From Macrostomum lignano (lineage: Eukaryota), in contig NIVC01000900.1 in NCBI GenBank assembly GCA_002269645.1, forward strand, positions 462,117 through 526,116: a DNA stretch of 64,000 nucleotides. The letters are read 5' to 3'. Below, piece by piece: positions 1-21,341 of this stretch. Numbering within the stretch: position 1 is the first letter of the stretch; every line of letters begins with the position of its first letter. The notes beneath the pieces are model-generated. The model saw only the letters and a program-made list of their open reading frames with translations, was not told the origin of the DNA and did not search any database. The translations under genes and the position numbers were made by a program.

Positions 1-283
1 TTTAAAATTTAAATGGCCTCCTAAGAAATGCGTATTTCCATGGTTGTTAGACTGCTGCAGACTGTGGTGGTGGAGCTGGAGATATACAAATTTCTCTCAG
101 GGCTGCTAATTGACCAGAAAGATGACGTGATTAAAGCATGGGAAATGATAACAACCATGATAGTACTACGTCCCACAAACTGGCTTTCGAAGCAGGGATC
201 GGCAGATTTTTATCTCAAAGGCCAGATAAAGAATCCAGCTCATGGCTACGGGCCAGATGAGAGTGAAAAGGAAAAGGAATAGA

Positions 284-1680
<1,397 letters not shown>

Positions 1681-2948
1681 CTATTTTGGCAAAATCATGT
1701 GAAATTTCGAGTCTCAAAGTTAATCCTGAGCGGTGCTGTGCACTTTTAAAGTTAGGCTGTTTTTTTCAGCGTAGCAACCACCCCAACCTCCGCCCGCCTG
1801 CCTCTCTTTCCCGATCCCGATCTGGGCCCAGATGTGTAAAAGGGTTTCAAAATTGAATAACTTTCAGCTGCCATAAGTTTGCTCCACGTAAAGCGATTGA
1901 CTTCAAACTTGACACAGTTCTTCATTGACTCATTCTCTGCCTAAATGTAAAGTTTCAACTCTCTAACTCAATCAGAACAGAAACTGTAAGCATATGAAGT
2001 TTGTCTGCTTTTTCTGTTGTTTGTGCCGCTCACTCACTTATTCCCCCAGAGCCAGACGAAGGGTGAGGCGATAGGGCTCAATGTACATAGCAAATGTACA
2101 GTGTTTTGGAATAAAGTTTTTATAGCCTTCTCGCACCCCGAGAGTGGAGAGGCGTGGAGAGGAGAGAGTTTAGCGAGAGATTCAATTTCAAACCATCAAA
2201 CCACTGTCCTCTGTATAGACAAGTCGCAGCATGCAGTTAAACAAGGATGGCAAGGATTCGCATAAGGTACTTTAAAATTTAAATGGCCTCCTAAGAAATG
2301 CGTATTTCCATGGTTGTTAGACTGCTGCAGACTGTGGTGGTGGAGCTGGAGATATACAAATTTCTCTCAGGGCTGCTAATTGGCCAGAAAGATGACGTGA
2401 TTAAAGCATGAGAAATGATAACAACCATGATAGTACTACGTCCCACAAACTGGCTTTCGAAGCAGGGATCAGCAGATTTTTATCTCAAAGGCCAGATAAA
2501 GAATCGAGCTCATAGCTTAGGGGCAGATGAAAGTGGAAAGAAGAAGGAATATACGATTCAAAGAGAGGAGAGGCGACAGAGGGGATAAAAGAAAAGATAA
2601 AAGATAATAGGAGAGATAAGGGGGTGAGGACGTATGAGAGAGAGAGGGAGAAGAGGGGAGAGAGGAAAAGCGAGAGCAGAGAGTAGAGATGAGAGAGCAG
2701 AGAGCTGCAGATGAGAGGAGAGAGGAGACAGCAGAGAGGAGACAGCAGAGAGGAAACAGGTGAAAGAAGAGATGAGAGAGTAATGGGAAGAGAGAAGCGA
2801 TAAAGATACATCTCTACATCTCTAAGGTTCTCTCTCTAAGGATCTCTAAAGTAGAGAAGTGAGTGAGGAGAGAGGAGAGGAAAGAGGAGAATTGAGAGGG
2901 GAGAGAGGAGGAGAGATAAGAGAGAAAGACAGAGAGAGAGAGAGAGAA

Positions 2949-3105
<157 letters not shown>

Positions 3106-3231
3106 GAGAAGTGATAAGAGAGAAAAGATAAAAGAAGAGAAAGGAAAGATGAGAGAGCAAAGACGAGAGAAAAAAAGAGGTAAGGGAAAAGACGAGAGAA
3201 GAGGGGAGAGATGAGAGAGTAGAGGAGAGAG

Positions 3232-3529
3232 CATACATGCGCAACAGTCGGCCGAGTCGGCCGATCCGGCCGACCGATTTGGCGGCCAACCAAGTAAGTC
3301 GCAAAAATGCCCACCCGAAAAAATAACCAAATAGTAGTACTAAGTAGCTGACGAGGCATTTTGGATTAATAACACAGTCATAGTTACTCCTGCCGTTTAC
3401 CTAAAGTTGCCTTAATTTTGCTTTAGGGTTTTTTTACATGTAAGTCGCATTTTTGGCCAAAAACTACGTCGCATTTTTGTTAAAACTAAGTCGCATGGCC
3501 GACCGAATTTCGGAGGTTGCGCATGTATG
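3232..3529. mobile_element. hAT-type MITE, copy 1 (298 bp)
   Basis: Perfect 14-bp TIR CATACATGCGCAAC...GTTGCGCATGTATG. Perfect 8-bp TSD GGAGAGAG (3224-3231 and 3530-3537). No coding capacity. A homologous copy lies at 55858-56184. Confidence 0.9.
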
Positions 3530-4043
3530 GGAGAGAGTTAAAAGAAGAGAGAAAAGAATAGAAAGGAGAATGAAGATCAGAGAGAAGAGGGGGTGAGAGG
3601 AGAGAGGAGAGAGAAGAGGAGAGAGAAAAGAAGAGACAAGAGATGAGATAAGAGAGATGAAAGAGAAGAGAGATAAAAGAGAAGAGAGATGAGGGAAGAT
3701 ACGAGAGAAGAGGGGAGAGAGGAGAGAGGAGAGACGAGGGACGAGAGAGATGAGAGGAAACAAAGAGACGATAGAAATTTTAAAGGATCCAAAGGAAGTA
3801 GGGAGAGTCAGGGAGAGACCAGAGTTTAGCAATATATGTTTTAGAGTCAGACAGACATTGCCTGACATTCTGCGCAGTACCCCAGCCAACAATGTCTCAA
3901 ACCTTAATTTTACACGAATGTGCTCCATTTTATGTCTACCTCTATCCTACTAACTATTAACAAGTTTTTGTTTGTGTATGGCCTTAGATTTCAGAATACA
4001 TGCAAAAGTAGTTCCGGGTATTGGAATTCCCCGGGTTCAAAAT

Positions 4044-4445
4044 CCGCGGGTTTCAACAGCTTGTCTCTAACTATAAAAATCAAAACTCTGTCTGTCTGTC
4101 TGTGGACAATTTTGATCGCTATGGACTCCCAAACCACTCAACCAAATTACACCAAACTTTACACCCACCCTAAACTTACTATGGAGAATGTCTTAGGCTA
4201 CCTAAAAATTTCCTAGACTCAAGTCTTCCTACCTAAAAGTGCAAAAAAACTGCTTAAAATGCGCGATTTTTTCACTAAATCCTACATAGCGCTGCTCCAG
4301 TTTTACCAATCCTCTTCAAATTTGACACACAATCTTCAACTATTTTGACACAATCGTGTAAAATTTCGAATCTCAAAGTTAATCCTTAACAGCGCTACGC
4401 ACTTTTAAAGTTGGGCTGCTTTTTTAAGCAAGACAGCCACCCCAA
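4044..4445 (+). mobile_element. Possible non-autonomous Helitron/DINE-1-like element fragment
   Basis: Begins TCTCTAACTATAAAAATC, followed by a short (CTGT)n and a non-coding core. This resembles the layout of microsatellite-bearing Helitron derivatives. No 3' hairpin/CTRR end was confirmed. Confidence 0.3.
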
Positions 4446-5283
4446 AAGTTTCAACTCTCTAACTCAATCAGAACAGAAACTGTAAGCATGTGAAATTTGT
4501 CTGCTTTTTCTGTTGTTTGTGCCACTCACTCACTCATTCCCCCAGAGCCAGACGAAGGGTCAGGCGATAGGACTGAATGTACATGGCAATGTACAGTGTT
4601 TTGGAATAACTTTTTATAGCCTTCTCTGCACCCCCGTGGAGAGGCTACTGGCTTTCGAAGTAGGGATTGGCAGACTTTTACTTCAAAAGCCAGATAAAAA
4701 ATCCAGCTTATGTGCGGGCCAGATGAGAGTGGAAAGGAGAAGGAATAGACTATTAGAAGAGAGGAGAGGCGAGAGGGGCATTAGAGAAAATATGGAAGAT
4801 AAGAAGAGAGACAAGTGGTGAGAAGAGAGCAGAGAAGAGAGGGTGTAAGAAGAGGGGAGAAAGGAGAGATGAGATTGTAGAGATGAGACAAATGAAATGA
4901 GAGATTAGAGAGTAAAGATGAGAGATGAAAAAGGTGAGAGGAGAGTGCAGAGAGACGAGAGAAGATAATAAAGGAGAGAGAGTATAGAAGAGGGAAGAGA
5001 AAAGAAGAGAGGAGTAAGGAAAGAGAGGAGTCAGAAGAGGTGAAAGAAAAGAGTACTCAGGAGATAAGTGAGAGAACGTATAAGAGAGTAAAGATGACAG
5101 ATAAGAGAGCAGAGATGAGGGTGAACAGACGAGAGATGGGAGAACAGAACAGAGTAGAGAGAACAGAGGAGAGATAAGAGAGAAGAGATTACAGAGACTA
5201 GAGGAGAGTGGAAAGACAGGTAGAGAGAAGAGGAAATAGGAGAAGGAAGAGGGGAGAGAGGAGAAGAGAGATGGGAGAGGAGA

Positions 5284-5341
<58 letters not shown>

Positions 5342-7572
5342 TGAGAGATGAGAGAGTTAAGAGAAGAGAGAAAAGAATAGAGAGGAGAAAGAAGAGACGA
5401 AAGAAGAGGGGGAGAGAGGAGAAGAGAGGGAAAACGAAAAGTAGAGAGGAGAAAGGAGAGAAGAAAGAAAACGAAAAGTAGAGAGGAGAGAGGAAGGAAA
5501 GAGTAGAGAGAAGAGACAAGAGATGAGATAAGAGAGATGAAAGAGAAGAGAGATGAGGGAAGATATGAGAGAAGAGAGGAGAGAGAAGAGGAGAGAGAAA
5601 ACGAAAAGTAGAGAGGAGAGAAGAGAGAAAACGAAAAGTAGAGAGGAGAGAGGAGAGAAGAGAGAGGAGAGACAAGGGACGAGAGAGAAGAAAGGAAACA
5701 GAAGAGACAATAGAAATTTTAAAGGATCCGAGAGATGTAGGGAGAGTCAGGGAGAGGCCAGAGTTTGCCAATACATGTTTTAGAGTCTGACAGACATTGC
5801 CTGACTTTCTTCAGAGTACCCCAGCCAACAATATCAATGTTTGCCTCAAACCCTAATTTTACACAAATGTGCTCCATTTTATGTCTACCTCTATCCTACA
5901 AACTATTAACAAGTTTTTGTTTATGTATGGCCTTAGATTTCAGAATGTATGCAAAAGTAGTTTCAGGGATTGGAATTCCCCAGGTTCAAAATCTGCAGGT
6001 TTCAACAGCTTGTGTGAAACATAAAAGAGACATTATTTCATATATAAAATAAGTGTCATGCCAAACATAAAGGAGCCTATTTAAAGCTGAGAAAGTTGTT
6101 GAACTAGATACTTGCTATCTGGGGTTGCTTGCTATTGAGAGATGCTTGCTATCTTGGGGGGGGGGGAGAGGAGCAATGCTTGCCATCTGGGGAATGCCTA
6201 TTATCTATGTGAGGGCTTTATGTTAAATATTGTATACTTTGTTTTTTAGACAAAAGATATTCATAGCAAACATCTTTGTCCATTTTACAATTTTCACATT
6301 TCACAATTTTACTCGAATGAGGTTATCTATAAACTGAAAAAAGAATTGGTTCTAAAAAAATATGCTTCTTTAATAGATTTGCATGAATAATTTTTGCTCC
6401 TTACTTCTTTGGCACCCCAAAGGGGGGCACTAGATTGCTAGTAATTATACTTTAGATAACTAATACAATACAAATATTTTTAGTTAGATAGAAATCTAGT
6501 TTATTTAAAAAAACCTATATTATAGAATCATAGCTTTATTGCAATAGGTTAAGTGCAAGTTTCTATAACAAAGAAAAGCATTTCAAAAAAACTTTTACAG
6601 TTAAAAGATGATGGATTATGGGAGTGCAAATAAAAAAATATTATTATTTGGATATAATAACATTGCTATTTTAAAGAATTTAAATAATAGAACTTTGCAT
6701 TATTGCAAGTTATTTATAAAAAAGAAATAGACACAACTTATTTTATTATAATGTATCTATAAATATCAAACATAACAATAGAAAAAAGTCCATTATTTTT
6801 TTAATGCAAAAGTAAAGACAAAGTTCCATAATTTTAAAATTTTGGCATATATAACAGTCACATTTACAATTTTTAGCATACTTGGCATACATAGGGACTT
6901 CTTCTTGAATTTAATTCTGGCATACATATACTACCTTTTCCTGACTATAGGTATAGTGTGAATGAATTGTTGAGTTGAAAAGTATCATTGAGGTAACTTT
7001 ATTTAATACACAGGGCTAGTTAAATGATTTTTTTACATAGAAAATGTTAGAAGTATTGACTATTGATAGTCTTATAACCAACTATTTATTTAAAGGGATA
7101 TTATGTCAGAAATAGGTTAAATAACATAGTTTAGATATATATTAGTATATCCTAGGTTTAGTATAGCAATAGAATTAGCAAGAATCACTTTTCGATTCAA
7201 TTTTAATCTGCAAGTACAAAAACAGTTTTAGTTATCTACTACAAGGAAAAAAGTATAAAACCATGTTTGTATGCCAGGACTAAAAATGTTTTAAGGTAGG
7301 AGCATATTCTTTATAATTTAAGATTATAACCTTAAGTTTAAAATCTATACAGTGCTACCAATTAATATATAAAGTTTGATTTTAATTAACAAGAATACTA
7401 TAATTTGGTTATATAACTGCATCAATATCAATGTTTAATTGGCCCAAATATCAGACAAAAAATATTTGATTTTCATCGTATTTTTGCAAACTATGAAGTT
7501 TCATCGTGGCAATAATATTTATATCTTGATCTATATTAGCAATCATTAATATTACTATAATACACATTTTAG

Positions 7573-10500
7573 GTAACATTGATTTCCGTCTCGCTCTTAT
7601 CTACCTGGCTAATGAAATATTGCACAATTGCAAACGCAAAGATGCTTCAGTCTACAAGGATGAGTTCAAAAAGGTCCTACCAAATGCACTGTCTCAGCTT
7701 AAGTAAGTTGCATTTGTTTAAATCATTTAATACGGTCTGTCTTAAAATTTTAACAATAATACTATGGTCTACTAAGAATTATGAAATAATAATACTTCTA
7801 AATAATATATGAATAGCAGAAATTTGGCATTCATGGTTTTAATTTCATAATTTGATGCCCAAAAAAATAAAATTATTAGTAAGAATAAGTGAAATTTCTT
7901 TTTTATAGAGGCACGAATATTGTGGACAAGGTTGTTCGCGTTTTGGAACTCTGGTCAGACAGGAAACTCCTGGATAGTGCCGTGTGTAGCGGTCTAATTG
8001 CCGGCATAAGTAAGGAAATTTCCTTTTGTACTTTAGTTTAATTTGTCATGCATGCTACTGTTTATCAGTAGTATTTAAAATATATTGTGTTTGTTTTTTC
8101 TTTATCTAGGCTCATCGTCAGGCGCAATTGAGGACGCCAAAATTGATCCAGAATTGATTAAGAACTTTTCGGTGAGTAAATTATTTAGAATATGTCTGGT
8201 AATAATAGTAAGTCGAAGGTAACGAGAATTCTATCTATCCTAAATTTTAAATCAGTGAACTTGTTGACTTGATTTTTACCAACAAATACTACAGTAACAA
8301 GATATGCTTACTCGCAATTCAAATTTGTAAAAATGAGTAGTGTGTCTACTTTTTCCCGTAGATTGTCTGCCCAGTGTCACCTAAATTTATTGTATCAGCT
8401 AAAATGTCCTTTCATTGGGGTTTGCGGCCTCAGGAGCAAATGAGGTTAAGAAAAAACTGTTGACATTTAAGTATGTGTACACAAGTTAACGCAAGACGGA
8501 CAAAATTTAGCCCAGGGGCAGGTCCAATCTATCTCAGCCAATGAGACAGCAGTAAGGAGAGACGGACAAAACTCAGCTTAGAGGTCTGGCCTAATCTAGC
8601 TCAGCCAATTAGAGAGCAGCAAGGAGAGACGGACAAAACTCAGTCTAGGGGGTAAGGCCCAATCTAGCTCAGCCAATAAGAGAGCAGCAAGGAGAGACGG
8701 ACATTACTCACTCAGTCTAGGGGATCAGGCCCATCTAGCTCAGCCAATGAGAGAGCAGCAAGGAGAGACGGACAAAACTCAGTCTAGGGGGTAAGGCCCA
8801 ATCTAGCTCAGCCAATAAGAGAGCAGCAAGGAGAGACGGACAAAACTCAGCCTAGGGGGCAGGCCCAATTTAGCTTAGCCAATGAGAAAGCAGTTAGAAG
8901 AGGGGTCAAAGTCAGACATAAGCAGGCAAGATTTTGATCTTTCACCGCCATATTTAATCCACAGCCTGACTCGGTCATCTCCGCCCTAAAAGAGTTCCTC
9001 ATCATGGAGACTGACACGGCGTCAAAGGAGCGCCAGCTAGGCTGCATGATCTCCTCAGAGATTCACAGTCCAGCTGCTGTACGCCAGATCAAAGATCGCT
9101 CCCACGGCGAGGCCTATCGTCAGCAGCTTGAAGAATCCTGCCAACGACTCGAAGATCTGGTCCGCGATTTAGAACGCCTGGAAGAGCGTAGAGAGGCGCT
9201 ACTGTCGCTACTAGAAAAAGCTCACATGTTCTTTGCCGCTCAATATTCCGACGTTAATGTTGTCGTGACAGCCTATAAAAAATACGGCGAGATGGTCGCT
9301 TTTATGCGTCGACGAGTTGAAGATCGACTTGTTGACTCGCCCGAGGCGCCGTCGCCGCCAGCTGACACGGCCGACGATTTTGGCGCAGAAGTAGCCGTTC
9401 TAAGCCGACGCGAGGATGAGATGGAGATCGACAGCGGAGATGAGAACGGCCAGGGGGCTGCCGTGCACCACCAGCAGCAGCAGAGCAGCAAACGCAGGCA
9501 CCGGAAGCACAGGCGACACAGCGGAAGTAGCGGAGGCGCCGGCAGCGTCGGGCATCGCGATCGGGCACCGGTTAGCGGCAAGAGCGGCAACAGTCGAAAG
9601 CGATCTTCTAGGTGGGTTCTGAAATTTGAAAAGCTGAACGAGTGTTAAACAAAACACAGTTTCTTTGTCTGCTGTCTTTTTTATTGGGCCACCCTCTTCT
9701 TAATCATACTAAGCTTTACGCCACCCATTTCATGGTGTTTTTATTTGTTACCTACTTCCCAGGGTGTTTTTATTGGACCACCCTACTTCCCAGGGTGTTT
9801 TTATTGGACCACCCTGTTTCCCAGGGTGTTTTTATTGGACCACCCTGCTTCCCAGGGTATTTTTATTGGACCACCCTGCTTCCCATGGTGTTTTTATTGG
9901 ACCACCCTACTTCCCAGCGTGTTTTTATTGGACCACCCTGCTTCCCAGGGTGTTTTTATTGGACCACCCTGCTTCCCAGCGTGTTTTTATTGGACCACCC
10001 TGCTTCCCAGGGTGTTTTTATTGGACCACCCTGCTTCCCATGGTGTTTTTATTGGACCACCCTGCTTCCCAGGGTGTTTTTATTGGACCACCCTTTTCCC
10101 CGGGTGTTTTTATTGGACCACCCTGTTTCCCCGGGTGTTTTTATTGGACCACCCTGTTTTCTATCGTTTTTTTATTATTTTTGTCCACCCTATTTCCTAG
10201 AAGGTGTGTTTTTGTACCACCCTACCCTACTTTCCATTATATTTTTACTGGACCATCAAAGCTCAAGGATTTTTTGGACCACCCTGTTTCCTAGGGTGTT
10301 TTTATTGCACCACCCTCCCTAAATCCATGCCGTGTCAAACAGCGGAGCAAAAGACATCAAATAATTCGCATCTGAAATCCCCACGCAGATCCTCTCGTAG
10401 TCGGTCACGTTCCATCAGCAGCGGCCGAGAAGGCAGCGCTCATCGGCACTCTTCATCAACTCAGCATCACCAGCATCATCATCATCATCATCAGCAGCAC

Positions 10501-11163
10501 CATCGCCACGAGATCGCCATCGGCTCCGACAGTCCGCCGCCGCCTCGGTCTGCTGCTCACCAGCATCAGCAGCCGCAGAAGCAGCAAAAGCAGCAATCCG
10601 GCCGGAGCGCCACTCCAACTCTCGATGAGCGCATTGGCGGGGCCGCCGCTGCCACCGCCGTCACCACTGCCGCCGTCTCGACGCCCGGCCATCAGCTGCC
10701 AATCACGGCCAGCTCCATCGACAGCTGGATGCCGCAGCACCTGCCGGTCTGGCGGCCTCGACTGCAGCCTCCGCCTCTGCCGCCACCGCCGCTGCCGATG
10801 CCGTCAATGAACTCGCTGAATAATAGCGGCAACAATGCATCTATTATGAGTATGAGTAGTAATCATAGTAATACTAATAGTAGTGTTAGTAGTAGTCAGC
10901 CAGCGGCTACTTCGCCAACAGGTGGCGGGGTTCGACCGCCTCCTCCGTTGCCGCCTCCGCCTCCGTTTTTCCCGGCCTTCCGGCAGCAGCAGCAGCAGCA
11001 GCAGTTTATGCAACAGCAGCAAGTGTTCTCACCCTATCGTCATGCTGCTCCGCCGCCTCCTCAAGGACCCATGCAGCATCATCAGCAGCAGCAGCCGCCT
11101 CCGCCAAGGCCGACAATGTTTGAATCAGGCCAGCCCGCAATGAACCGTTGGAGACCAGTTTGA
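7573..11163 (+). CDS. RPRD2: RPRD2-like RNA Pol II CTD-interacting (CID + CREPT coiled-coil) protein, 5'-partial. Exons 7573-7702, 7909-8009, 8110-8171, 8965-9611, 10389-11163 (stop)
   Basis: Spliced translation gives ...FRLALIYLANEILHNCKRKDASVYKDEFKKVLPNAL...VVRVLELWSDRK (CID; cf. RPRD2 YLANDVIQNCKRK) and FFAAQYSDVNVVVTAYKKY (cf. YEAQYKEVKVVANAYK). An RS/His/Gln/Pro-rich tail follows. All introns are GT-AG with consistent phases. The N-terminal exon was not located. Confidence 0.85.
8485..8905. repeat. ~68-bp tandem repeat, ~6 copies, in RPRD2 intron
   Basis: Unit GGACAAAACTCAGTCTAGGGGGTAAGGCCCAATCTAGCTCAGCCAATAAGAGAGCAGCAAGGAGAGAC. Confidence 0.9.
9748..10320. repeat. 31-bp minisatellite in RPRD2 intron
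   Basis: Unit ACCACCCTGCTTCCCAGGGTGTTTTTATTGG, ~17 copies. It explains ORFs 9642..10322, 9745..10200 and 9764..10294. Confidence 0.95.
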
Positions 11164-11784: not shown

Positions 11785-12112
11785 AATTTTTCTCCGGGTT
11801 TTTTTAGTCAGTCGGTTAAACAAAATAGCAATATTTAGCATCAATTCAAACTTATCATTATAACAAGACACACTCAAGGGCCCCGGGTCAAACTATTTTC
11901 AAATAGGGAATTTCTCCGGGTTTAAAAAAATTAGTTAACTAATTTAACAAACTATCGAATTTAGAATTTTGGCGCCAATTCAAATTGTTATTGCTTAGAC
12001 TAAAATAGAAAGTGAAGTGCGTCCCCCCAGTAAGAATCTCTCCGGCTTCAATCCGTAACAAACCGGTTAAACAAATACAGAAATAACATTCTGGCGCCAA
12101 TTCAAATTTGTT
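11785..12112 (+). promoter_or_regulatory. Triplicated ~124-bp upstream module with E2F-like (TTGGCGCCAA), CHR-like (TTCAAA) and forkhead-like (TAAACAA) motifs
   Basis: TCTCCGG at 11791, 11913 and 12039. TGGCGCCAATTCAAA at ~11970 and ~12092; CAATTCAAA at 11842. GGTTAAACAAA at 11814 and 12065. Ends ~110 bp before the ATG at 12219. Confidence 0.45.
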
Positions 12113-12218
12113 TCATCTTCAGCTCACAGCGAAATCCCGAAATTTTGCTTTCTCTCGAAACAACTCACTTTTCAACTATTAAGTTCGAGATTCATCACCG
12201 AATTACGCCGTCTTTATC

Positions 12219-15200
12219 ATGGAAGCTGAGAGTGACATCAATTTCGAGCCGGAGCGAGTTCTGCTATTCGATTGTCCTTTGTGCAAATTTTTCACTACTT
12301 ATTTCTCACGCCTATCCGAGCATGCCATAGGCCATCCCGAGCGGGACATCGAGTTTGTAGTGTACAAATGCAGCGAGTGCGAGCTGCTCTGCTCTAGCGA
12401 GTATCTGCTTCAAGTTAGTGCTCTGTGTACTTTTCTGCTTTTTTGCTCGTAGCCGTATTGTTGCTTTTTGTGGGTCGCTGAATATTGGTTGCTTTACTGT
12501 AATATTTCAAATTTAATAGAGTTAGGATTAAGACTAAGATACCTCTACAGTGGACTCTGAGAATGTTACAATAGTCGACTCTCAGCATCTCAATAGCGGA
12601 CACTCAGAATCTCAATAGTAGATCATCAGTATCTCAATAGTGGACTCTGAGAATGTTACAATAGTCGACTCTCAGCATCTCAATAGCGGACACTCAGAAT
12701 CTCAATAGTAGATCATCAGTATCTCAATAGTGGACTCTAGCATCTCAATAGCGGATTTTCAGAATGTCACAATATTGGACACTGAGAATCCCACAATAGT
12801 GGACTCTCAGCATCTCAATAGTGAACTCTCAGCATCTCAATAGTGGACTCTCAGCATCTGTATAGTAGACTCCCAGTATCTCAATAGTAGACTCCCAGTA
12901 TCTCAATAGTAGACTCCCAGCATCTCAATAGTAGACTCCCAGTATCTCAATAGTGGACTCTCAGCATCTCAATAGTAGACTCTCAGCATCTCAATAGTAG
13001 CCTCTCTGCATCTCAATAGTAGCCTCTCAGCATCTCAATAGTGAACTCTCAGCATCTCAATAGTAGACTCTCAGCATCTCAATAGTGGACTATTAGCATC
13101 TCAATAGCGTACACTCAGCATCGCACAATAGTGGACTCTCAGAATCTCGAGAATAGACTCTCAGAATCTCACAACAGTAGACTATCAGAATCTCAACAGT
13201 GGACTCTAAGAATCTCAATACTGGACTCTTAGAATCTCAATAGTAGGTTCTCAGAATCTCATACTTAGTAGACTCTCAGAATCTCAATAGTGGAATCTCA
13301 GAATCTCACAAAAGTGGACTCTCAGAATCTCAATAATGGACTCTCAAAATCTCAATAGTGGAATCTCAGAATCTCACAAAAGTGGACTCTCAGAATCTCA
13401 ATAATGAACTCTCAAAATCTCAATAGTGGACTCTTAAAATGTCACAATATTGGACTCTCTAAATCTGACAATAGTGGACTCAGCATCTCAATAGTGGACT
13501 AAGAATCTCTCAATGGAGGACTTTCAGACTCACAATAGTGGACTCTCAGACTCTCAAAGTAATGGTCCCTCAGAATCTTACAAAAGTGAGTAGACTAGGA
13601 ATCGAACTCAGGACACTATTCGGGCCCCGCTCCCTCCTCACCGCGCAGGAGCACAGCGAAGTTCACCACCCGGACAAGACTGTGGTCATTCAAAAAGTGG
13701 AAGAATTATTTCTGAACTGCCGAACAGACAGCGACAATGGCGATGATGAAGAGCAGCAACAAAAGCAAGAGGAAGCTGACAATGATGAAGAGGAGGCTGC
13801 AACAGGCGCCGATGGCACTGACTACAGCAGAGATGAGGAATTCTCAACAAAGTGGACAACTAACGCCGGCTCTGTCGGCGGTGGGAAGCGAGCCTGGGCT
13901 AGCGAGAAGAACACCAATAACCAGCAGATGAAGCATCAGCAGCAGCAGTTCAGTCGCAAACGCCAATTCGGAGCCGCTGGCCAATCGTCAGCAGTCTCGC
14001 TGATGCAGCCGGGCTTCAACCGTCGCCCAATTGGTGGCCCGATGCAGCCGGTGCATTTGATGCAGAAACGATTGCGGCCGAACTGGAGCCAAGGTCAAGG
14101 AGTTCGGCAACAGCAGTTTGGCGGCGTGATGCAGCCGGATCTGGTTGTCCGAGATAAGGGCGATTACGTCATCAGCGTTAGCCGAGGCGGCTTAGAGGCT
14201 CGGCTTCGGTTCGATCCGGCATTCTATTCGTCTGAAGCTGCCAGCCAAACTTTTAATACTCTGGCCACTGAGCTGGCGTGGGAGCAGCTGAAAACTCGGC
14301 CCAAGCCAGGTGGCAAAGGCGAATCCACTGAGCCAAGGATGACGTACTGGGTTGGGCCGAAATATTCCTACGGCTCGGTGCACCTGCCCGAGAATTCTAA
14401 TTGGCATCCAGCGCTGATGCAGATTAAACAGGATGTTGAACGGGCGCTTGAGGGTAAAGTGACGTTTAACGCCTGCTTGGCAATTCTGTACAGGTGAGTA
14501 TGAGGAGACAGGGTGGCTAACTACATCGTTCCTCAACCAGCGCTGATAATCCCAGATAAACACCCCCCAAAACTCGCTAATCCCAGATAAACACCTCCAA
14601 AACTCGCTAATCCCAGATAAACACCCCCCCAAAACTCGCTAGTCCTAGATAAACACCTCCAAAACTCGCTAATCCCAGATAAACACCTCAAAACTCATTA
14701 ATTCCCAATAAACACCTCAAAACTCATTAATCCCCAATAAACACTCCAAAACTCGCTAATCCCAGATAAACACCCCCCAAAACTCGCTAATCCCAGATAA
14801 ACACCTCCAAAACTCGCTAATCCCAGATTAACACCTCAAAATTCATTAATCCCCAATAAACACTCCAAAACTCGATAATCCCAGATAAACACCTGACTCG
14901 ATAATCCCTGATAAACACCCCAAAACTCGCTAGTCTCTGATAAACACCCCCAAAACTCGCTAGTCTCTGATAAACACCCTGATAAACACACCTCAGAGAC
15001 CACAACGACTCGATGCCGTGGCACTCCGACAACGAACGCGAGATGGGTTCGAATCCGGCCATCGCCAGCGTCAGTTTCGGCGCCAGTCGACTCTTTGAGT
15101 TGCGCCGATTTGACGTCGCTCAGCAGGGCTTCGGCGGTGGCGGCGGCGGCGGCATCGGCGGAGTGGTCTTCGGCCAACAGATTCAAGGATTCCGCTCCGT

Positions 15201-15366
15201 CCACGTGCCCCTGTCTGCCGGCTCTCTGCTGTACACCTGCGGCTCCATCCAGAAGGACTGGCAGCACAGGATCGGCCGGCAGTCCGCCAGTTGCGGACCC
15301 AGGATTAATCTCACTTTCCGCACCATTGTGACCGGTTCGGGTGGTTCGAAACGGACTGGGAAATGA
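12219..15366 (+). CDS. ALKBH3: ALKBH3-like alpha-ketoglutarate/Fe(II) dioxygenase with two N-terminal C2H2 zinc fingers (469 aa). Exons 12219-12413, 13649-14493, 14997-15366
   Basis: Spliced ORF is 1410 nt. AlkB-family motifs: EPRMTYWVG..YSY, LYR..DSMPWHSDNE (HxD), ASVSFGASRLFELR, DWQHRI (His), PRINLTFR (two Arg). VVRDKGDYVIS matches the ALKBH3 N-terminal strand. N-terminal fingers: CPLC..H..H and CSEC..HSEVHH. Confidence 0.9.
12545..13590. repeat. Degenerate 22-bp minisatellite filling ALKBH3 intron 1
   Basis: Unit TCTCAATAGTGGACTCTCAGCA. Confidence 0.9.
14545..14995. repeat. ~30-bp minisatellite filling ALKBH3 intron 2 up to the acceptor
   Basis: Unit AAAACTCGCTAATCCCAGATAAACACCTCC. The array grades into the acceptor ...TAAACACACCTCAG|. 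Confidence 0.9.
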
Positions 15367-15500
15367 ACTGGCCGATTGTTGTCTGTCTGGGAATATAGGA
15401 TGCAAAGCGAGAGAACTGGCGCGATGATAGAGTGGGTGGGGGTGTTGCTGACAGGCTTATGAAATATTGGCGTGATTCTATCAAAATGACAGCGAGCGGC

Positions 15501-16353
15501 TGGGCCAGCCTTCCAAATCCTCAGTTGCTGAGCCAGCCTCCCAAATCCTCAGTTGCTGGGCCAGCCTCCCAAATCCTCAGTTGCTGGGCCAGCCTCCCAG
15601 ATCCTCAGTTTCTGGGCCAGCCTCCCAGATCCTCATTTGCTAAGCCAGCCTCCCAGATCCTCAGTTGCTGAGCCAGCCTCCCAAATCCTCAGTTGCTAAG
15701 CCAGCCTCCCAGATCCTCAGTTGCTGAGCCAGCCTCCCAGATCCTCAGTTGCTGGGCCAGCCTCCTAAATCCTCGCGCAGTTCTTGTGCCAGCCTCCCAG
15801 ATCCTCAGTTGCTAAGCCAGCCTCCCAGATTCTCAGTTGCTAAGCCAGCCTCCCAAATCCTCAGTTGCTGAGCCAGCCTCCCAGATCCTCAGTTGCTAAG
15901 CCAGCCTCCCAGATCCTCAGTTGCTGAGCCAGCCTCCCAAATCCTCAGTTGCTAAGCCAGCCTCCCAGATCCTCAGTTGCTGAGCCAGCCTCCCAGATCC
16001 TCAGTTGCTGGGCCAGCCTCCTAAATCCTCGCGCAGTTCTTGTGCCAGCCTCCCAGATCCTCAGTTGCTAAGCCAGCCTCCCAGATTCTCAGTTGCTAAG
16101 CCAGCCTCCCAAATCCTCAGTTGCTGAGCCAGCCTCCCAGATCCTCAGTTGATGGGCCAGCCTTTCAGATCCTCAGTTGCTGAGCCAGCCTCCCAAATCC
16201 TCAGTTGCTGGGCCAGCCTCCCAGATCCCCAGTTGCTAAGCCAGCCTCCCAGATCCTCAGTTGCTAAGCCAGCCTCCCAGATCCTCAGTTTCTGGGCCAG
16301 CCTCCCAAATCCTCAGTTGCTAAGCCAGCCTCCCAGATCCTCAGTTGCTAGGC
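15501..16353 (+). repeat. 28-bp dispersed minisatellite family, array 1 (~30 copies)
   Basis: Unit GGGCCAGCCTCCCAGATCCTCAGTTGCT, with an internal 256-bp higher-order duplication (CCTCGCGCAG at 15771 and 16027). Confidence 0.95.
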
Positions 16354-20495: not shown

Positions 20496-21341
20496 TGTCA
20501 CCATCGGGTCTTTGGCATCTTACTTTGTCGCCATTGGGTCTTTGGCGCCATTGGATCTTACTGTGTCGCCATTGTGTCTTTGGCGCCATTGGATCTTACT
20601 TTGTCGCCATTGGGTCTTTGGCGCCATTGGATCTTACTTTGTCGCCATTGGGTCTTTGGCGCCATTGGATCTTACTTTGTCGCCATTGTGTCTTTGGCGC
20701 CATTGGATCTTACTGTGTCGCCATTGTGTCTTTAGCGCCATTGGATCTTACTTTGTCGCCATTGGGTCTTTGGCGCCATTGGATCTTACTTTGTCGCCAT
20801 TGGGTCTTTGGCGCCATTGGATCTTACTTTGTCGCCATTGGGTCTTTGGCGCCATTGGATCTTACTTTGTCGCCATTGTGTCTTTAGCGCCATTAGATCT
20901 TACTTTGTCGCCATTGTGTCTTTGGCGCCATTGGATCTTACTTTGTCGCCATTGTGTCTTTAGCGCCATTGGATCTTACTTTGTCGCCATTGTGTCTTTG
21001 GCGCCATTGGATCTTACTTTTTCGCCATTGTGTCTTTGGCGCCATTGGATCTTACTTTGTCGCCATTGTGTCTTTGGCGCCATTGGATCTTACTTTTTCG
21101 CCATTGTGTCTTTAGCGCCATTGGATCTTACTTTGTCGCCATTGTGTCTTTAGCGCCATTGGATCTTACTTTGTCGCCATTGTGTCTTTAGCGCCATTAG
21201 ATCTTTGTCGCCATTGTGTCTTTAGCGCCATTGGATCGTACTTTTTCGCCATTGTGTCTTTGGCGCCATTAGATCTTTGTCGCCTTTGTGTCTTTGGCGC
21301 CATTCGATCTCAATTTTTCGCCATCAGGTCTTTTGGCGCCT
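20496..21341. repeat. 38-bp minisatellite (21+17-bp sub-units, each with CGCCATT)
   Basis: Unit TGGATCTTACTTTGTCGCCATTGGGTCTTTGGCGCCAT, ~21 copies. Confidence 0.95.

What the first reader, a model, noticed from the sequence alone, without database searches (positions are those of the whole stretch)
12219..15366. ALKBH3-type demethylase fused to tandem C2H2 zinc fingers
Seen: exon 1 encodes CPLC-x12-H-x3-H and the CSEC half of a second finger. Its His ligands (HSEVHH) begin exon 2 in phase 0, and exon 2 runs without a stop through acidic and Q/G-rich linkers into the dioxygenase domain, so the fusion is built into the gene structure. Established: characterised ALKBH2/ALKBH3 proteins (m1A/m3C repair) have no C2H2 fingers. 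Inference: a lineage-specific architecture that could target oxidative demethylation to particular DNA/RNA sequences or partner proteins, i.e. a reader-eraser fusion. This is the strongest candidate for an undescribed system in the window.
Basis: partly seen in the sequence, partly recalled or inferred. Interest (0 to 1): 0.72.

Follow-up and report, generated by a model that had tools for sequence, protein, structure and literature searches.

The report
Flatworm ALKBH3 demethylase with zinc fingers
This is a real, transcribed gene of the flatworm Macrostomum lignano that joins two N-terminal C2H2 zinc fingers to an intact ALKBH3-type nucleic-acid demethylase; the combination has not been studied, but the gene is already in the databases, so this is a modest variant of a known enzyme rather than a new system.

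Summary
Three exons on the + strand (12219-12413, 13649-14493, 14997-15366) with GT-AG introns encode a 469-aa protein. It has two C-x2-C-x12-H-x3-H fingers, the second split by intron 1 in phase 0. A ~155-aa acidic/Q/G-rich linker follows, then an AlkB domain with all iron- and 2OG-binding residues. By sequence and by fold the domain is closest to human ALKBH3, not ALKBH2.

The window is Macrostomum lignano. The protein is identical to GenBank PAA75158.1, whose annotation was built from RNA-seq transcripts. Three syntenic copies keep both splice sites. All five differences in the finger region are synonymous.

The architecture is not unique. A second, divergent M. lignano lineage (Mlig024840/021122) carries a homologous two-finger module in front of an ALKBH3-like domain within a single exon. 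Two contigs from unidentified eukaryotes encode three-finger versions. A third M. lignano ALKBH3 lineage has no fingers.

Most likely function: m1A/m3C oxidative demethylation of single-stranded DNA/RNA, with the fingers as a recruitment module. The "reader-eraser" idea is untested, and the finger module is acidic and lacks a canonical linker. ALKBH3 fusions to PHD, SRA and AT-hook modules are already published. Verdict: new variant of a known kind, moderate-to-low interest.

The parts
11970..12107 (+). Putative promoter region with two exact copies of TGGCGCCAATTCAAAT (11970-11985 and 12092-12107), about 250 and 127 nt upstream of the ATG.
   Evidence: 4 matches in the window at up to 2 mismatches against 0.06 expected; both copies are kept at the same spacing in the two paralogous loci L005 and L006. 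Its role as an E2F/CCAAT- or CDE/CHR-like element is inference only.
12219..12413 (+). Exon 1 (codons 1-65): start codon, finger 1, and the Cys half plus helix start of finger 2.
   Evidence: It is identical to the N-terminus of PAA75158.1.
12273..12335 (+). C2H2 finger 1 (C19-x2-C22-x12-H35-x3-H39).
   Evidence: The module aligns to finger 1 of P0053 and of the L003 protein.
12369..12413 (+). C2H2 finger 2, first part (C51-x2-C54 to Q65).
   Evidence: Pfam zf-C2H2_4 covers residues 49-72 at E 0.0033 on the 95-aa fragment, below threshold.
12414..13648 (+). Intron 1 (GT...AG, phase 0), mostly a 22-bp minisatellite (12549-13578, about 46 copies).
   Evidence: Intron length is 1235 here against 1050 and 1046 in the paralogues, with identical splice sites.
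13649..13666 (+). C2H2 finger 2, second part (E66, H67-x3-H71).
   Evidence: The splice restores the exact C-x2-C-x12-H-x3-H spacing.
13649..14493 (+). Exon 2 (codons 66 to the first two bases of codon 347).
13670..14137 (+). Low-complexity linker (residues 73-228): an acidic stretch, then a Q/G-rich stretch with three MQP repeats and two short basic patches (RKR at 168, KRLR at 205).
   Evidence: for composition and motifs. AlphaFold2 pLDDT is below 50 through residues 101-227.
14138..14493 (+). N-terminal half of the ALKBH3-type domain (residues 229-346).
   Evidence: pLDDT is about 85-98.
14494..14996 (+). Intron 2 (GT...AG, phase 2), mostly a 30-bp minisatellite (14547-14978).
   Evidence: Length is 503 here against 271 and 1001 in the paralogues.
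14997..15366 (+). Exon 3: the catalytic half of the domain, with H356 (15022-15024), D358 (15028-15030), H437 (15265-15267), R449 (15301-15303), R455 (15319-15321) and stop TGA (15364-15366). It includes a Gly-rich loop insertion (residues about 388-412).
   Evidence: aligned to the human ALKBH3 HxD...H and RxNxTxR motifs; these residues are invariant in 20 homologues.

Best explanation
This is one transcribed protein-coding gene of Macrostomum lignano (GenBank PAA75158.1, Mlig015948.g2). It encodes a catalytically competent ALKBH3-clade Fe(II)/2-oxoglutarate dioxygenase preceded by an old, conserved pair of atypical C2H2 zinc fingers and a ~155-residue disordered linker. The C-terminal domain most likely removes 1-methyladenine and 3-methylcytosine from single-stranded DNA and/or RNA by oxidative demethylation, as human ALKBH3 does. 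The finger pair most likely acts as a tethering or recruitment module on a flexible leash. It is more probably a protein- or RNA-interaction module than a sequence-specific dsDNA reader.

The gene belongs to a small family of ZnF-ALKBH3 proteins: two divergent lineages in M. lignano and relatives in at least two unidentified eukaryotes. The family arose by duplication of ALKBH3, and a finger-less copy (Mlig032459) still exists in the same genome.

Shown: the gene structure, transcript-derived annotation, domain identities, intact catalytic residues, homology of the finger module across the family, and purifying selection on the finger exon. Inferred: the substrate, the activity and what the fingers bind.
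For: Gene model. The spliced ORF of 469 aa is 100% identical over its full length to PAA75158.1. The GenBank annotation of this assembly comes only from RNA-seq and de novo transcripts with TransDecoder ORFs (PMC5730564). An independent model from the older assembly (UniProt A0A1I8I2L6, P0027) also reads straight across the exon 1/exon 2 junction.

Paralogues. Three syntenic copies, each downstream of a CID/CREPT gene, keep identical splice sites while intron lengths vary. Codons 1-109 show 5 variable codons among the three copies, all synonymous. Non-synonymous changes occur only at codons 110, 162, 175, 289 and 334.

Enzyme. Pfam 2OG-FeII_Oxy_2 matches at E 1e-24. Human ALKBH3 scores E 6e-34 against 7e-14 for ALKBH2. 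The AlphaFold2 domain has pLDDT about 90, and Foldseek puts human ALKBH3 first (E 3e-21, TM 0.89-0.91) with ALKBH2 next. H356, D358, H437, R449 and R455 are invariant in the homologue alignment.

Fingers. Two strict C2H2 patterns occur in 0 of 200,000 shuffles. phmmer aligns residues 15-78 nine times to a 943-aa poly-C2H2 protein at E 9.5e-22. Forty of the 41 PDB hits at E below 10 are C2H2 proteins (HIC2 E 0.0027, BCL11A E 0.0075, CTCF, ZHX1), mostly aligned across both fingers.

Family. The two-finger module aligns colinearly to the N-termini of Mlig024840 (E 5e-13) and of the L003 protein (E 7e-12). In Mlig024840 the fingers and the AlkB domain lie in one uninterrupted ORF. On the cDNA-like contig L003 they form one 436-aa ORF. 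The five finger-bearing sequences group together inside animal ALKBH3 in an NJ tree.

Recruitment rather than dsDNA reading. The module has net charge -6 (family range -6 to +3) against +5 to +6 for the BCL11A and HIC2 pairs. Its inter-finger linker is 11 residues and is not TGEKP.
Against: No activity, zinc-binding or expression data exist for this gene. It was not found in the stored, truncated neoblast and germline tables. The fingers are below every Pfam gathering score; the best is 18.4 bits against a cut-off of 27. AlphaFold2 gives no confident fold for residues 1-227. The 'RED' hairpin motif of human ALKBH3, thought to favour single-stranded substrates, is not conserved in the alignment, so substrate preference could differ. 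The closest solved relatives of the finger pair are sequence-specific DNA binders, so DNA binding is not excluded. Bootstrap support for placing this gene with the other finger-bearing sequences is only 79 of 200. The other four group in 197 of 200.
Confidence: 0.62

Rival explanations
1. One reading: a sequence-targeted eraser. The two fingers read a specific DNA or RNA sequence, or a modified base, and direct demethylation (for example of DNA 6mA or mRNA m1A) to particular loci, which would make this an epigenetic regulator rather than a repair enzyme.
For: The closest solved relatives of the finger pair are DNA-binding pairs: HIC2, BCL11A ZnF4-5 (which also has a long inter-finger linker) and CTCF. 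Iyer et al. proposed that ALKBH3-clade proteins fused to DNA-binding or chromatin modules might demethylate DNA 6mA (PMC4738411). The finger module is conserved and under purifying selection.
Against: Two fingers would specify roughly 6 bp at most. The module is acidic, with net charge -6. It lacks the TGEKP linker. The PDB similarities are marginal, at E 0.003-0.1. The catalytic domain is most like the m1A/m3C repair enzyme ALKBH3. No methyl-reader domain is detected.
Confidence: 0.15
2. A chimeric or mis-joined gene model: exon 1 belongs to a separate small zinc-finger gene or to an untranslated leader, and the real ALKBH3 protein starts inside exon 2.
For: M. lignano trans-splices many mRNAs, and many transcriptional units are polycistronic precursors (PMC5730564). 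No read-level data could be inspected here. Residues 1-227 have no confident predicted structure.
Against: Finger 2 exists only across the splice, with exact canonical spacing in phase 0. The first ATG codon in exon 2 (M159, MKHQQQ...) lies well downstream of the junction, and everything from the junction onwards is open. Two independent annotations join the exons. Splice sites are conserved in three copies, and all changes in exon 1 are synonymous. The same architecture occurs without any intron in Mlig024840 and on the L003 contig.
Confidence: 0.04
3. A catalytically silent or repurposed paralogue: after duplication of ALKBH3, the finger-bearing copies serve as scaffolds or binding proteins rather than demethylases.
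For: The sister lineage (Mlig024840/021122) has HxE instead of HxD and lacks the first Arg of RxNxTxR. One member also carries an extra degenerate AlkB-like domain. A finger-less ALKBH3 (Mlig032459) could cover the housekeeping role. This gene has a Gly-rich insertion at residues 388-412.
Against: In this gene every iron and 2OG ligand and the other family-invariant residues are intact. The domain models with high confidence onto ALKBH3. The insertion lies in a surface loop that is also variable and gapped in human ALKBH3.
Confidence: 0.12

Closest known systems
Human ALKBH3 (PDB 2IUW, 8JNK, 8JNR, 9NCZ)
   Same: It is the best sequence match (E 6e-34) and the best structural match (TM 0.89-0.91, 33-34% identity). 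The HxD...H triad and the RxNxTxR 2OG site are conserved.
   Different: Human ALKBH3 (286 aa, from my own knowledge) has a short N-terminus without fingers. This protein adds two C2H2 fingers, a ~155-aa linker and a Gly-rich loop insertion. The RED hairpin motif is not conserved.
Human ALKBH2
   Same: Same AlkB fold and catalytic residues.
   Different: It is clearly more distant: E 7e-14 and Foldseek E about 1e-15 at 26-28% identity. No APIM or PIP-box PCNA motif was found here.
ALKBH3-clade fusions to PHD, SAD/SRA and AT-hook; ALKBH4/NMAD-1 clade with an N-terminal Zn-binding domain (Iyer, Zhang and Aravind 2015, PMC4738411)
   Same: The principle is the same: an AlkB-family demethylase joined to a small nucleic-acid- or chromatin-binding module, including zinc-binding ones.
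   Different: That paper's text has no occurrence of 'C2H2'. My literature searches found no description of C2H2-ALKBH3.
M. lignano Mlig024840 / Mlig021122 / Mlig002470 (PAA79604.1, PAA90535.1, PAA82062.1)
   Same: They carry a homologous two-finger module at the same N-terminal position (E 5e-13), followed by an ALKBH3-like domain. They group with this gene in the NJ tree.
   Different: The catalytic domain is only about 30% identical. They have HxE and an altered 2OG motif. They are intronless and tandemly duplicated. Transcripts of this lineage are listed as 'Neoblast, stringent' and labelled simply ALKBH3.
Tandem C2H2 pairs of BCL11A (ZnF4-5), HIC2, CTCF and ZHX1
   Same: They give a colinear alignment over both fingers. 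BCL11A and ZHX1 also have longer than canonical inter-finger linkers.
   Different: The similarity is marginal (E 0.003-0.06). Those pairs are basic (+5 to +6), whereas this one is acidic (-6).

Membership tests
AlkB family (Fe(II)/2OG dioxygenase, Pfam PF13532) | Profile match above the curated threshold. | tested here: met
   88.2 bits against a cut-off of 31.2, E 1e-24, residues 255-455.
AlkB family (Fe(II)/2OG dioxygenase, Pfam PF13532) | HxD...H iron triad and RxNxTxR 2-oxoglutarate site. | tested here: met
   H356, D358, H437, R449, N451, T453 and R455 align to the human ALKBH3 motifs and are invariant in 20 homologues.
AlkB family (Fe(II)/2OG dioxygenase, Pfam PF13532) | Double-stranded beta-helix fold. 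| tested here: met
   The AlphaFold2 domain has pLDDT about 85-98. Foldseek gives TM 0.89-0.91 to ALKBH3 crystal structures.
ALKBH3 subfamily | Closer to ALKBH3 than to ALKBH2 or other AlkB homologues. | tested here: met
   E 6e-34 against 7e-14. Foldseek ranks 1-10 are all ALKBH3. The nearest named homologues are annotated ALKBH3 or ALKBH3-like: Branchiostoma, Tubulanus, Antedon and Albula.
ALKBH3 subfamily | ALKBH3-specific beta-hairpin 'RED' motif linked to the preference for single-stranded substrates (from my own knowledge of the literature). | tested here: not met
   In the alignment, human 'tgIRED--ityqqPR' faces 'ktRPKPggkgestePR'. The motif is not conserved.
ALKBH3 subfamily | m1A/m3C demethylase activity on ssDNA/RNA. 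| not testable with these tools
   This needs a biochemical assay.
Classical C2H2 zinc finger | C-x2-4-C-x12-H-x3-5-H ligand spacing. | tested here: met
   It is met twice, at residues 19-39 and 51-71. Two such patterns arose in 0 of 200,000 shuffles.
Classical C2H2 zinc finger | Pfam or other profile match above the curated threshold. | tested here: not met
   The best matches are zf-C2H2_4 at 18.4 bits (cut-off 27) and zf-C2H2 at 15.4 bits (cut-off 25.2). However, only C2H2-type families match the finger residues. A sister copy is named 'C2H2-type domain-containing protein' by UniProt, and phmmer links the module to a true poly-C2H2 protein at E 9.5e-22.
Classical C2H2 zinc finger | Beta-beta-alpha fold. 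| tested here: inconclusive
   The single-sequence AlphaFold2 model gives strand-strand-helix for finger 2 (E48-50, E57-59, H61-70), but mean pLDDT is 43.7 and finger 1 is modelled as one helix.
Tandem DNA-binding C2H2 array | Canonical 7-residue TGEKP-like linker and a basic recognition surface. | tested here: not met
   The linker between H39 and C51 is the 11-residue PERDIEFVVYK. Net charge is -6.

The most novel reading that the evidence does not exclude
Flatworms evolved a family of ALKBH3 paralogues whose conserved two-finger module gives the demethylase a defined address: specific RNAs, DNA sequences or a chromatin or repair partner. These proteins would then act as naturally targeted erasers of m1A/m3C or DNA 6mA in proliferating stem cells. 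One lineage is neoblast-enriched, and this gene has conserved E2F/CHR-like promoter motifs.
Probability: 0.1. Interest if true: 0.6.

Novelty: new variant of a known kind. Interest (0 to 1): 0.3.

Why it matters
If the fingers really address the enzyme to particular nucleic acids or partners, this family would be a natural example of a targeted AlkB-type demethylase. It would also show how ALKBH3 can be recruited other than by the ASCC complex that recruits it in mammals. M. lignano has transgenesis and RNAi, and a sister lineage is stem-cell enriched, so the question can be tested. As it stands, the finding is a correct but modest domain-architecture observation on an already annotated hypothetical protein.

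Tried and rejected
- The word-index homology search with the 95-aa finger region returned no candidate at all. The tool did not even recover the protein itself, so this says nothing about distribution.
- The profile search with the ZnF-ALKBH3 alignment was swamped by ~200-aa bacterial AlkB proteins and added no new finger-bearing member.
- AlphaFold2 was uninformative for the N-terminus, both for the whole protein with 20 homologues and for the 95-aa fragment alone.
- I tried to identify the organisms behind ENA assemblies ERZ25070786, ERZ3792534 and ERZ23498939 through the literature and found nothing. The taxonomic reach of the family beyond Macrostomum therefore stays unknown.
- I looked for this gene's transcript IDs in papers and in the neoblast and germline tables. 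Only the sister lineage Mlig024840.g4 / RNA1509_746 was found, and those tables are truncated in storage.
- I searched for PCNA-binding APIM and PIP-box motifs in the linker and found none.
- The idea that the fusion is a recent accident of one locus is rejected. Homologous modules occur in a ~30%-identical paralogue lineage and in two other organisms.
Full report
**What is in the sequence.** Reading 11800-15800 and splicing in a script gives a three-exon gene on the + strand.
- Exon 1 is 12219-12413, exon 2 is 13649-14493 and exon 3 is 14997-15366.
- Both introns are GT-AG (GTTAGT...GCGCAG and GTGAGT...CCTCAG).
- An in-frame TAA lies 13 codons upstream of the ATG (12180-12182).
- Read-through of exon 1 into the intron hits a stop after 12 codons.
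- The product is 469 aa.

Residues 19-39 (CPLC-x12-H-x3-H) and 51-71 (CSEC-x12-H-x3-H) have classical C2H2 spacing. The second finger is assembled across the splice. Two such patterns never arose in 200,000 shuffles of the 95 N-terminal residues. Both introns are filled with minisatellites, a 22-mer and a 30-mer.

**Domain identities.**
- Pfam finds 2OG-FeII_Oxy_2 at E 1e-24, residues 255-455.
- Against PDB sequences, human ALKBH3 scores E 6e-34 and ALKBH2 scores 7e-14.
- In that alignment H356/D358/H437 and R449/R455 sit on the iron and 2-oxoglutarate ligands. They are invariant in an alignment of 20 homologues.
- AlphaFold2 models the domain at pLDDT about 85-98.
- Foldseek puts ten ALKBH3 chains first (E 3e-21, TM 0.89-0.91) and ALKBH2 next.

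'ALKBH3-type' is therefore correct. One ALKBH3 hallmark, the RED hairpin, is not conserved.

The fingers are weaker by profile. Every Pfam hit is sub-threshold: zf-C2H2_4 at E 0.0033, ZHX at 0.011 and zf-C2H2 at 0.026 on the isolated fragment. Even so, the families that match the finger residues themselves are all C2H2-type. phmmer aligns residues 15-78 nine times to a 943-aa poly-C2H2 protein at E 9.5e-22. Forty of 41 PDB hits at E below 10 are C2H2 proteins, most aligned across both fingers: HIC2 at 0.0027, BCL11A at 0.0075, CTCF and ZHX1.

**Where it comes from, and whether the fusion is transcribed.** The protein is 100% identical over its full length to GenBank PAA75158.1 (BOX15_Mlig015948g2, Macrostomum lignano), on contig NIVC01000900.1. 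Wudarski et al. 2017 state that the GenBank annotation of this assembly is the 'coregenes' subset of a genome-guided transcriptome. That transcriptome combined StringTie and TACO on RNA-seq with a de novo assembly, and its ORFs came from TransDecoder (PMC5730564). The deposited CDS is thus itself transcript evidence for both junctions.

A model from the older assembly (UniProt A0A1I8I2L6, named 'C2H2-type domain-containing protein') also reads through LLQ|EHSEVHH. I could not inspect reads directly.

**Paralogues and selection.** The assembly holds three syntenic copies: the window, L005 and L006. Each lies downstream of a CID/CREPT (RPRD1-like) gene.
- Exons are 98-99.5% identical.
- Splice sites are identical.
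- Intron lengths differ, at 1046-1235 and 271-1001 nt.
- In codons 1-109 five codons vary among the copies and all five changes are synonymous.
- Non-synonymous changes fall in the linker (110, 162, 175) and at 289 and 334.

The numbers are small, but they fit a translated, constrained finger exon.

**The architecture is a family trait, not a one-off.** An exhaustive phmmer search of 1.84 billion representatives gave 4093 hits. Scanning the best 150 for C2H2 patterns and looking up their sources showed three things.

(i) A second M. lignano lineage (Mlig024840, Mlig002470, Mlig021122) has two fingers at the same N-terminal positions. Its module aligns to this one at E 5e-13, colinear over both fingers and the linker, including the HP-x-K-x-V tail. 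Its fingers and AlkB domain lie in one uninterrupted ORF that is tandemly duplicated (L007 4016-5065 and 7483-8532).

(ii) An ENA contig (L003, 1584 nt, cDNA-like) has a full ORF (80-1390) that encodes 436 aa with three fingers plus an ALKBH3 domain. The database gene call had truncated it. Its module aligns at E 7e-12.

(iii) A 22.7-kb ENA contig (L002) carries an intron-containing gene with three fingers plus the domain.

In an NJ tree of the catalytic domain, the five finger-bearing sequences group together within animal ALKBH3. Bootstrap support is 79 of 200 for all five and 197 of 200 for the four without this gene. A third M. lignano ALKBH3 lineage (Mlig032459, 490 aa) has an RS/Pro-rich N-terminus and no fingers. 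None of the named ALKBH3 homologues from other phyla had fingers. The organisms behind L002, L003 and the nearest fragment P0028 (58% identity) could not be identified.

**How it probably works.** The catalytic half has everything an active ALKBH3 needs, so oxidative removal of m1A/m3C from single-stranded DNA/RNA is the default expectation. This is an inference from family membership.

The fingers sit about 155 disordered residues away (pLDDT below 50; Q/G/E/D-rich). That layout suits a tether. Several features argue against a classical sequence-specific dsDNA reader:
- There are only two fingers.
- The inter-finger linker has 11 residues and is not TGEKP.
- The net charge is -6, with a family range of -6 to +3. 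The BCL11A and HIC2 pairs that the module resembles most carry +5 to +6.

I therefore favour a protein- or RNA-interaction role. This is inference, and DNA binding is not excluded. No PCNA-binding motif is present.

**Comparison with what is known.** No paper was found that links Macrostomum and ALKBH or that describes a C2H2-ALKBH3 fusion. Iyer, Zhang and Aravind (2015) already reported ALKBH3-clade fusions to PHD, SAD/SRA and AT-hook modules, and an N-terminal Zn-binding domain in the ALKBH4 clade. They suggested such proteins might act on DNA 6mA. The sister-lineage transcript (RNA1509_746 / Mlig024840.g4) appears as plain 'ALKBH3' in the stringent neoblast lists of Grudniewska et al. 2016 and 2018. 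Its fingers are not mentioned in the passages retrieved.

**Verdict.** However, the gene is already annotated and the principle is already published. 'Reader-eraser' remains speculation, with some features pointing the other way. I class it as a new variant of a known kind, with interest 0.3.

Noticed in passing
window 11970-11985 and 12092-12107 (+); window 47621-47690 (-); L005 2752-2767 and 2874-2889; L006 2746-2761 and 2874-2889: An exact 16-mer, TGGCGCCAATTCAAAT, occurs twice just upstream of the gene and is kept at the same spacing in both paralogous promoters. Three tandem copies of a close variant (GTGGCGCCAATTTGAA) lie at 47.6 kb on the other strand. It contains E2F-like (TTGGCGCC), CCAAT and CHR-like (TTTGAA/TTCAAA) elements, so it may be a cell-cycle promoter module.
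   Followed up: partly
window 12549-13578, 14547-14978, 15499-16349: Both introns and the 3' flank are filled with minisatellites: a 22-mer of about 46 copies, a 30-mer of about 15 copies and a 28-mer of about 30 copies. Intron lengths differ between the three paralogous copies, apparently through these arrays. This fits the ~15% simple and tandem repeat content reported for this genome.
   Followed up: partly
window about 9004-11163 (+): The upstream neighbour is a CID plus CREPT domain (RPRD1-like) gene of about 625 aa, ending at 11163. The same neighbour precedes all three copies of the ALKBH3 gene, so the copies are segmental or ploidy duplicates.
   Followed up: partly
L007 4016-5065 and 7483-8532; proteins P0053, P0178, P0056: The sister ZnF-ALKBH3 lineage (Mlig024840/021122) is intronless and tandemly duplicated. 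It has HxE (WHCEKE) instead of HxD and lacks the first Arg of RxNxTxR. The 708-aa member carries an extra degenerate AlkB-like domain. Transcripts of this lineage are listed as 'Neoblast, stringent'. Whether it is still an enzyme is unclear.
   Followed up: partly
protein P0301 (PAA53807.1, Mlig032459g1): A third M. lignano ALKBH3 lineage has a canonical catalytic domain behind a ~230-aa Arg/Ser/Lys- and Pro-rich N-terminus and no fingers.
   Followed up: no
L003 80-1390: The database gene call on this ENA contig starts at an internal Met (373 aa). The open frame actually starts at nt 80 and encodes 436 aa with three C2H2 fingers. The source organism is unknown.
   Followed up: yes
window 1-6000, 28001-30000 and 40001-42000: These stretches have extreme strand composition. 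GC skew is +0.4 to +0.6 over 1-6000. GC is 0.27 with GC skew -0.85 at 28-30 kb. GC skew is -0.58 at 40-42 kb. They are probably long satellite or tandem-repeat blocks.
   Followed up: no
window 20512-21153 (+): This ORF gives Pfam DUF3894 at E 1e-14, but with no individual stretch passing. It is probably a low-complexity or repeat artefact.
   Followed up: no
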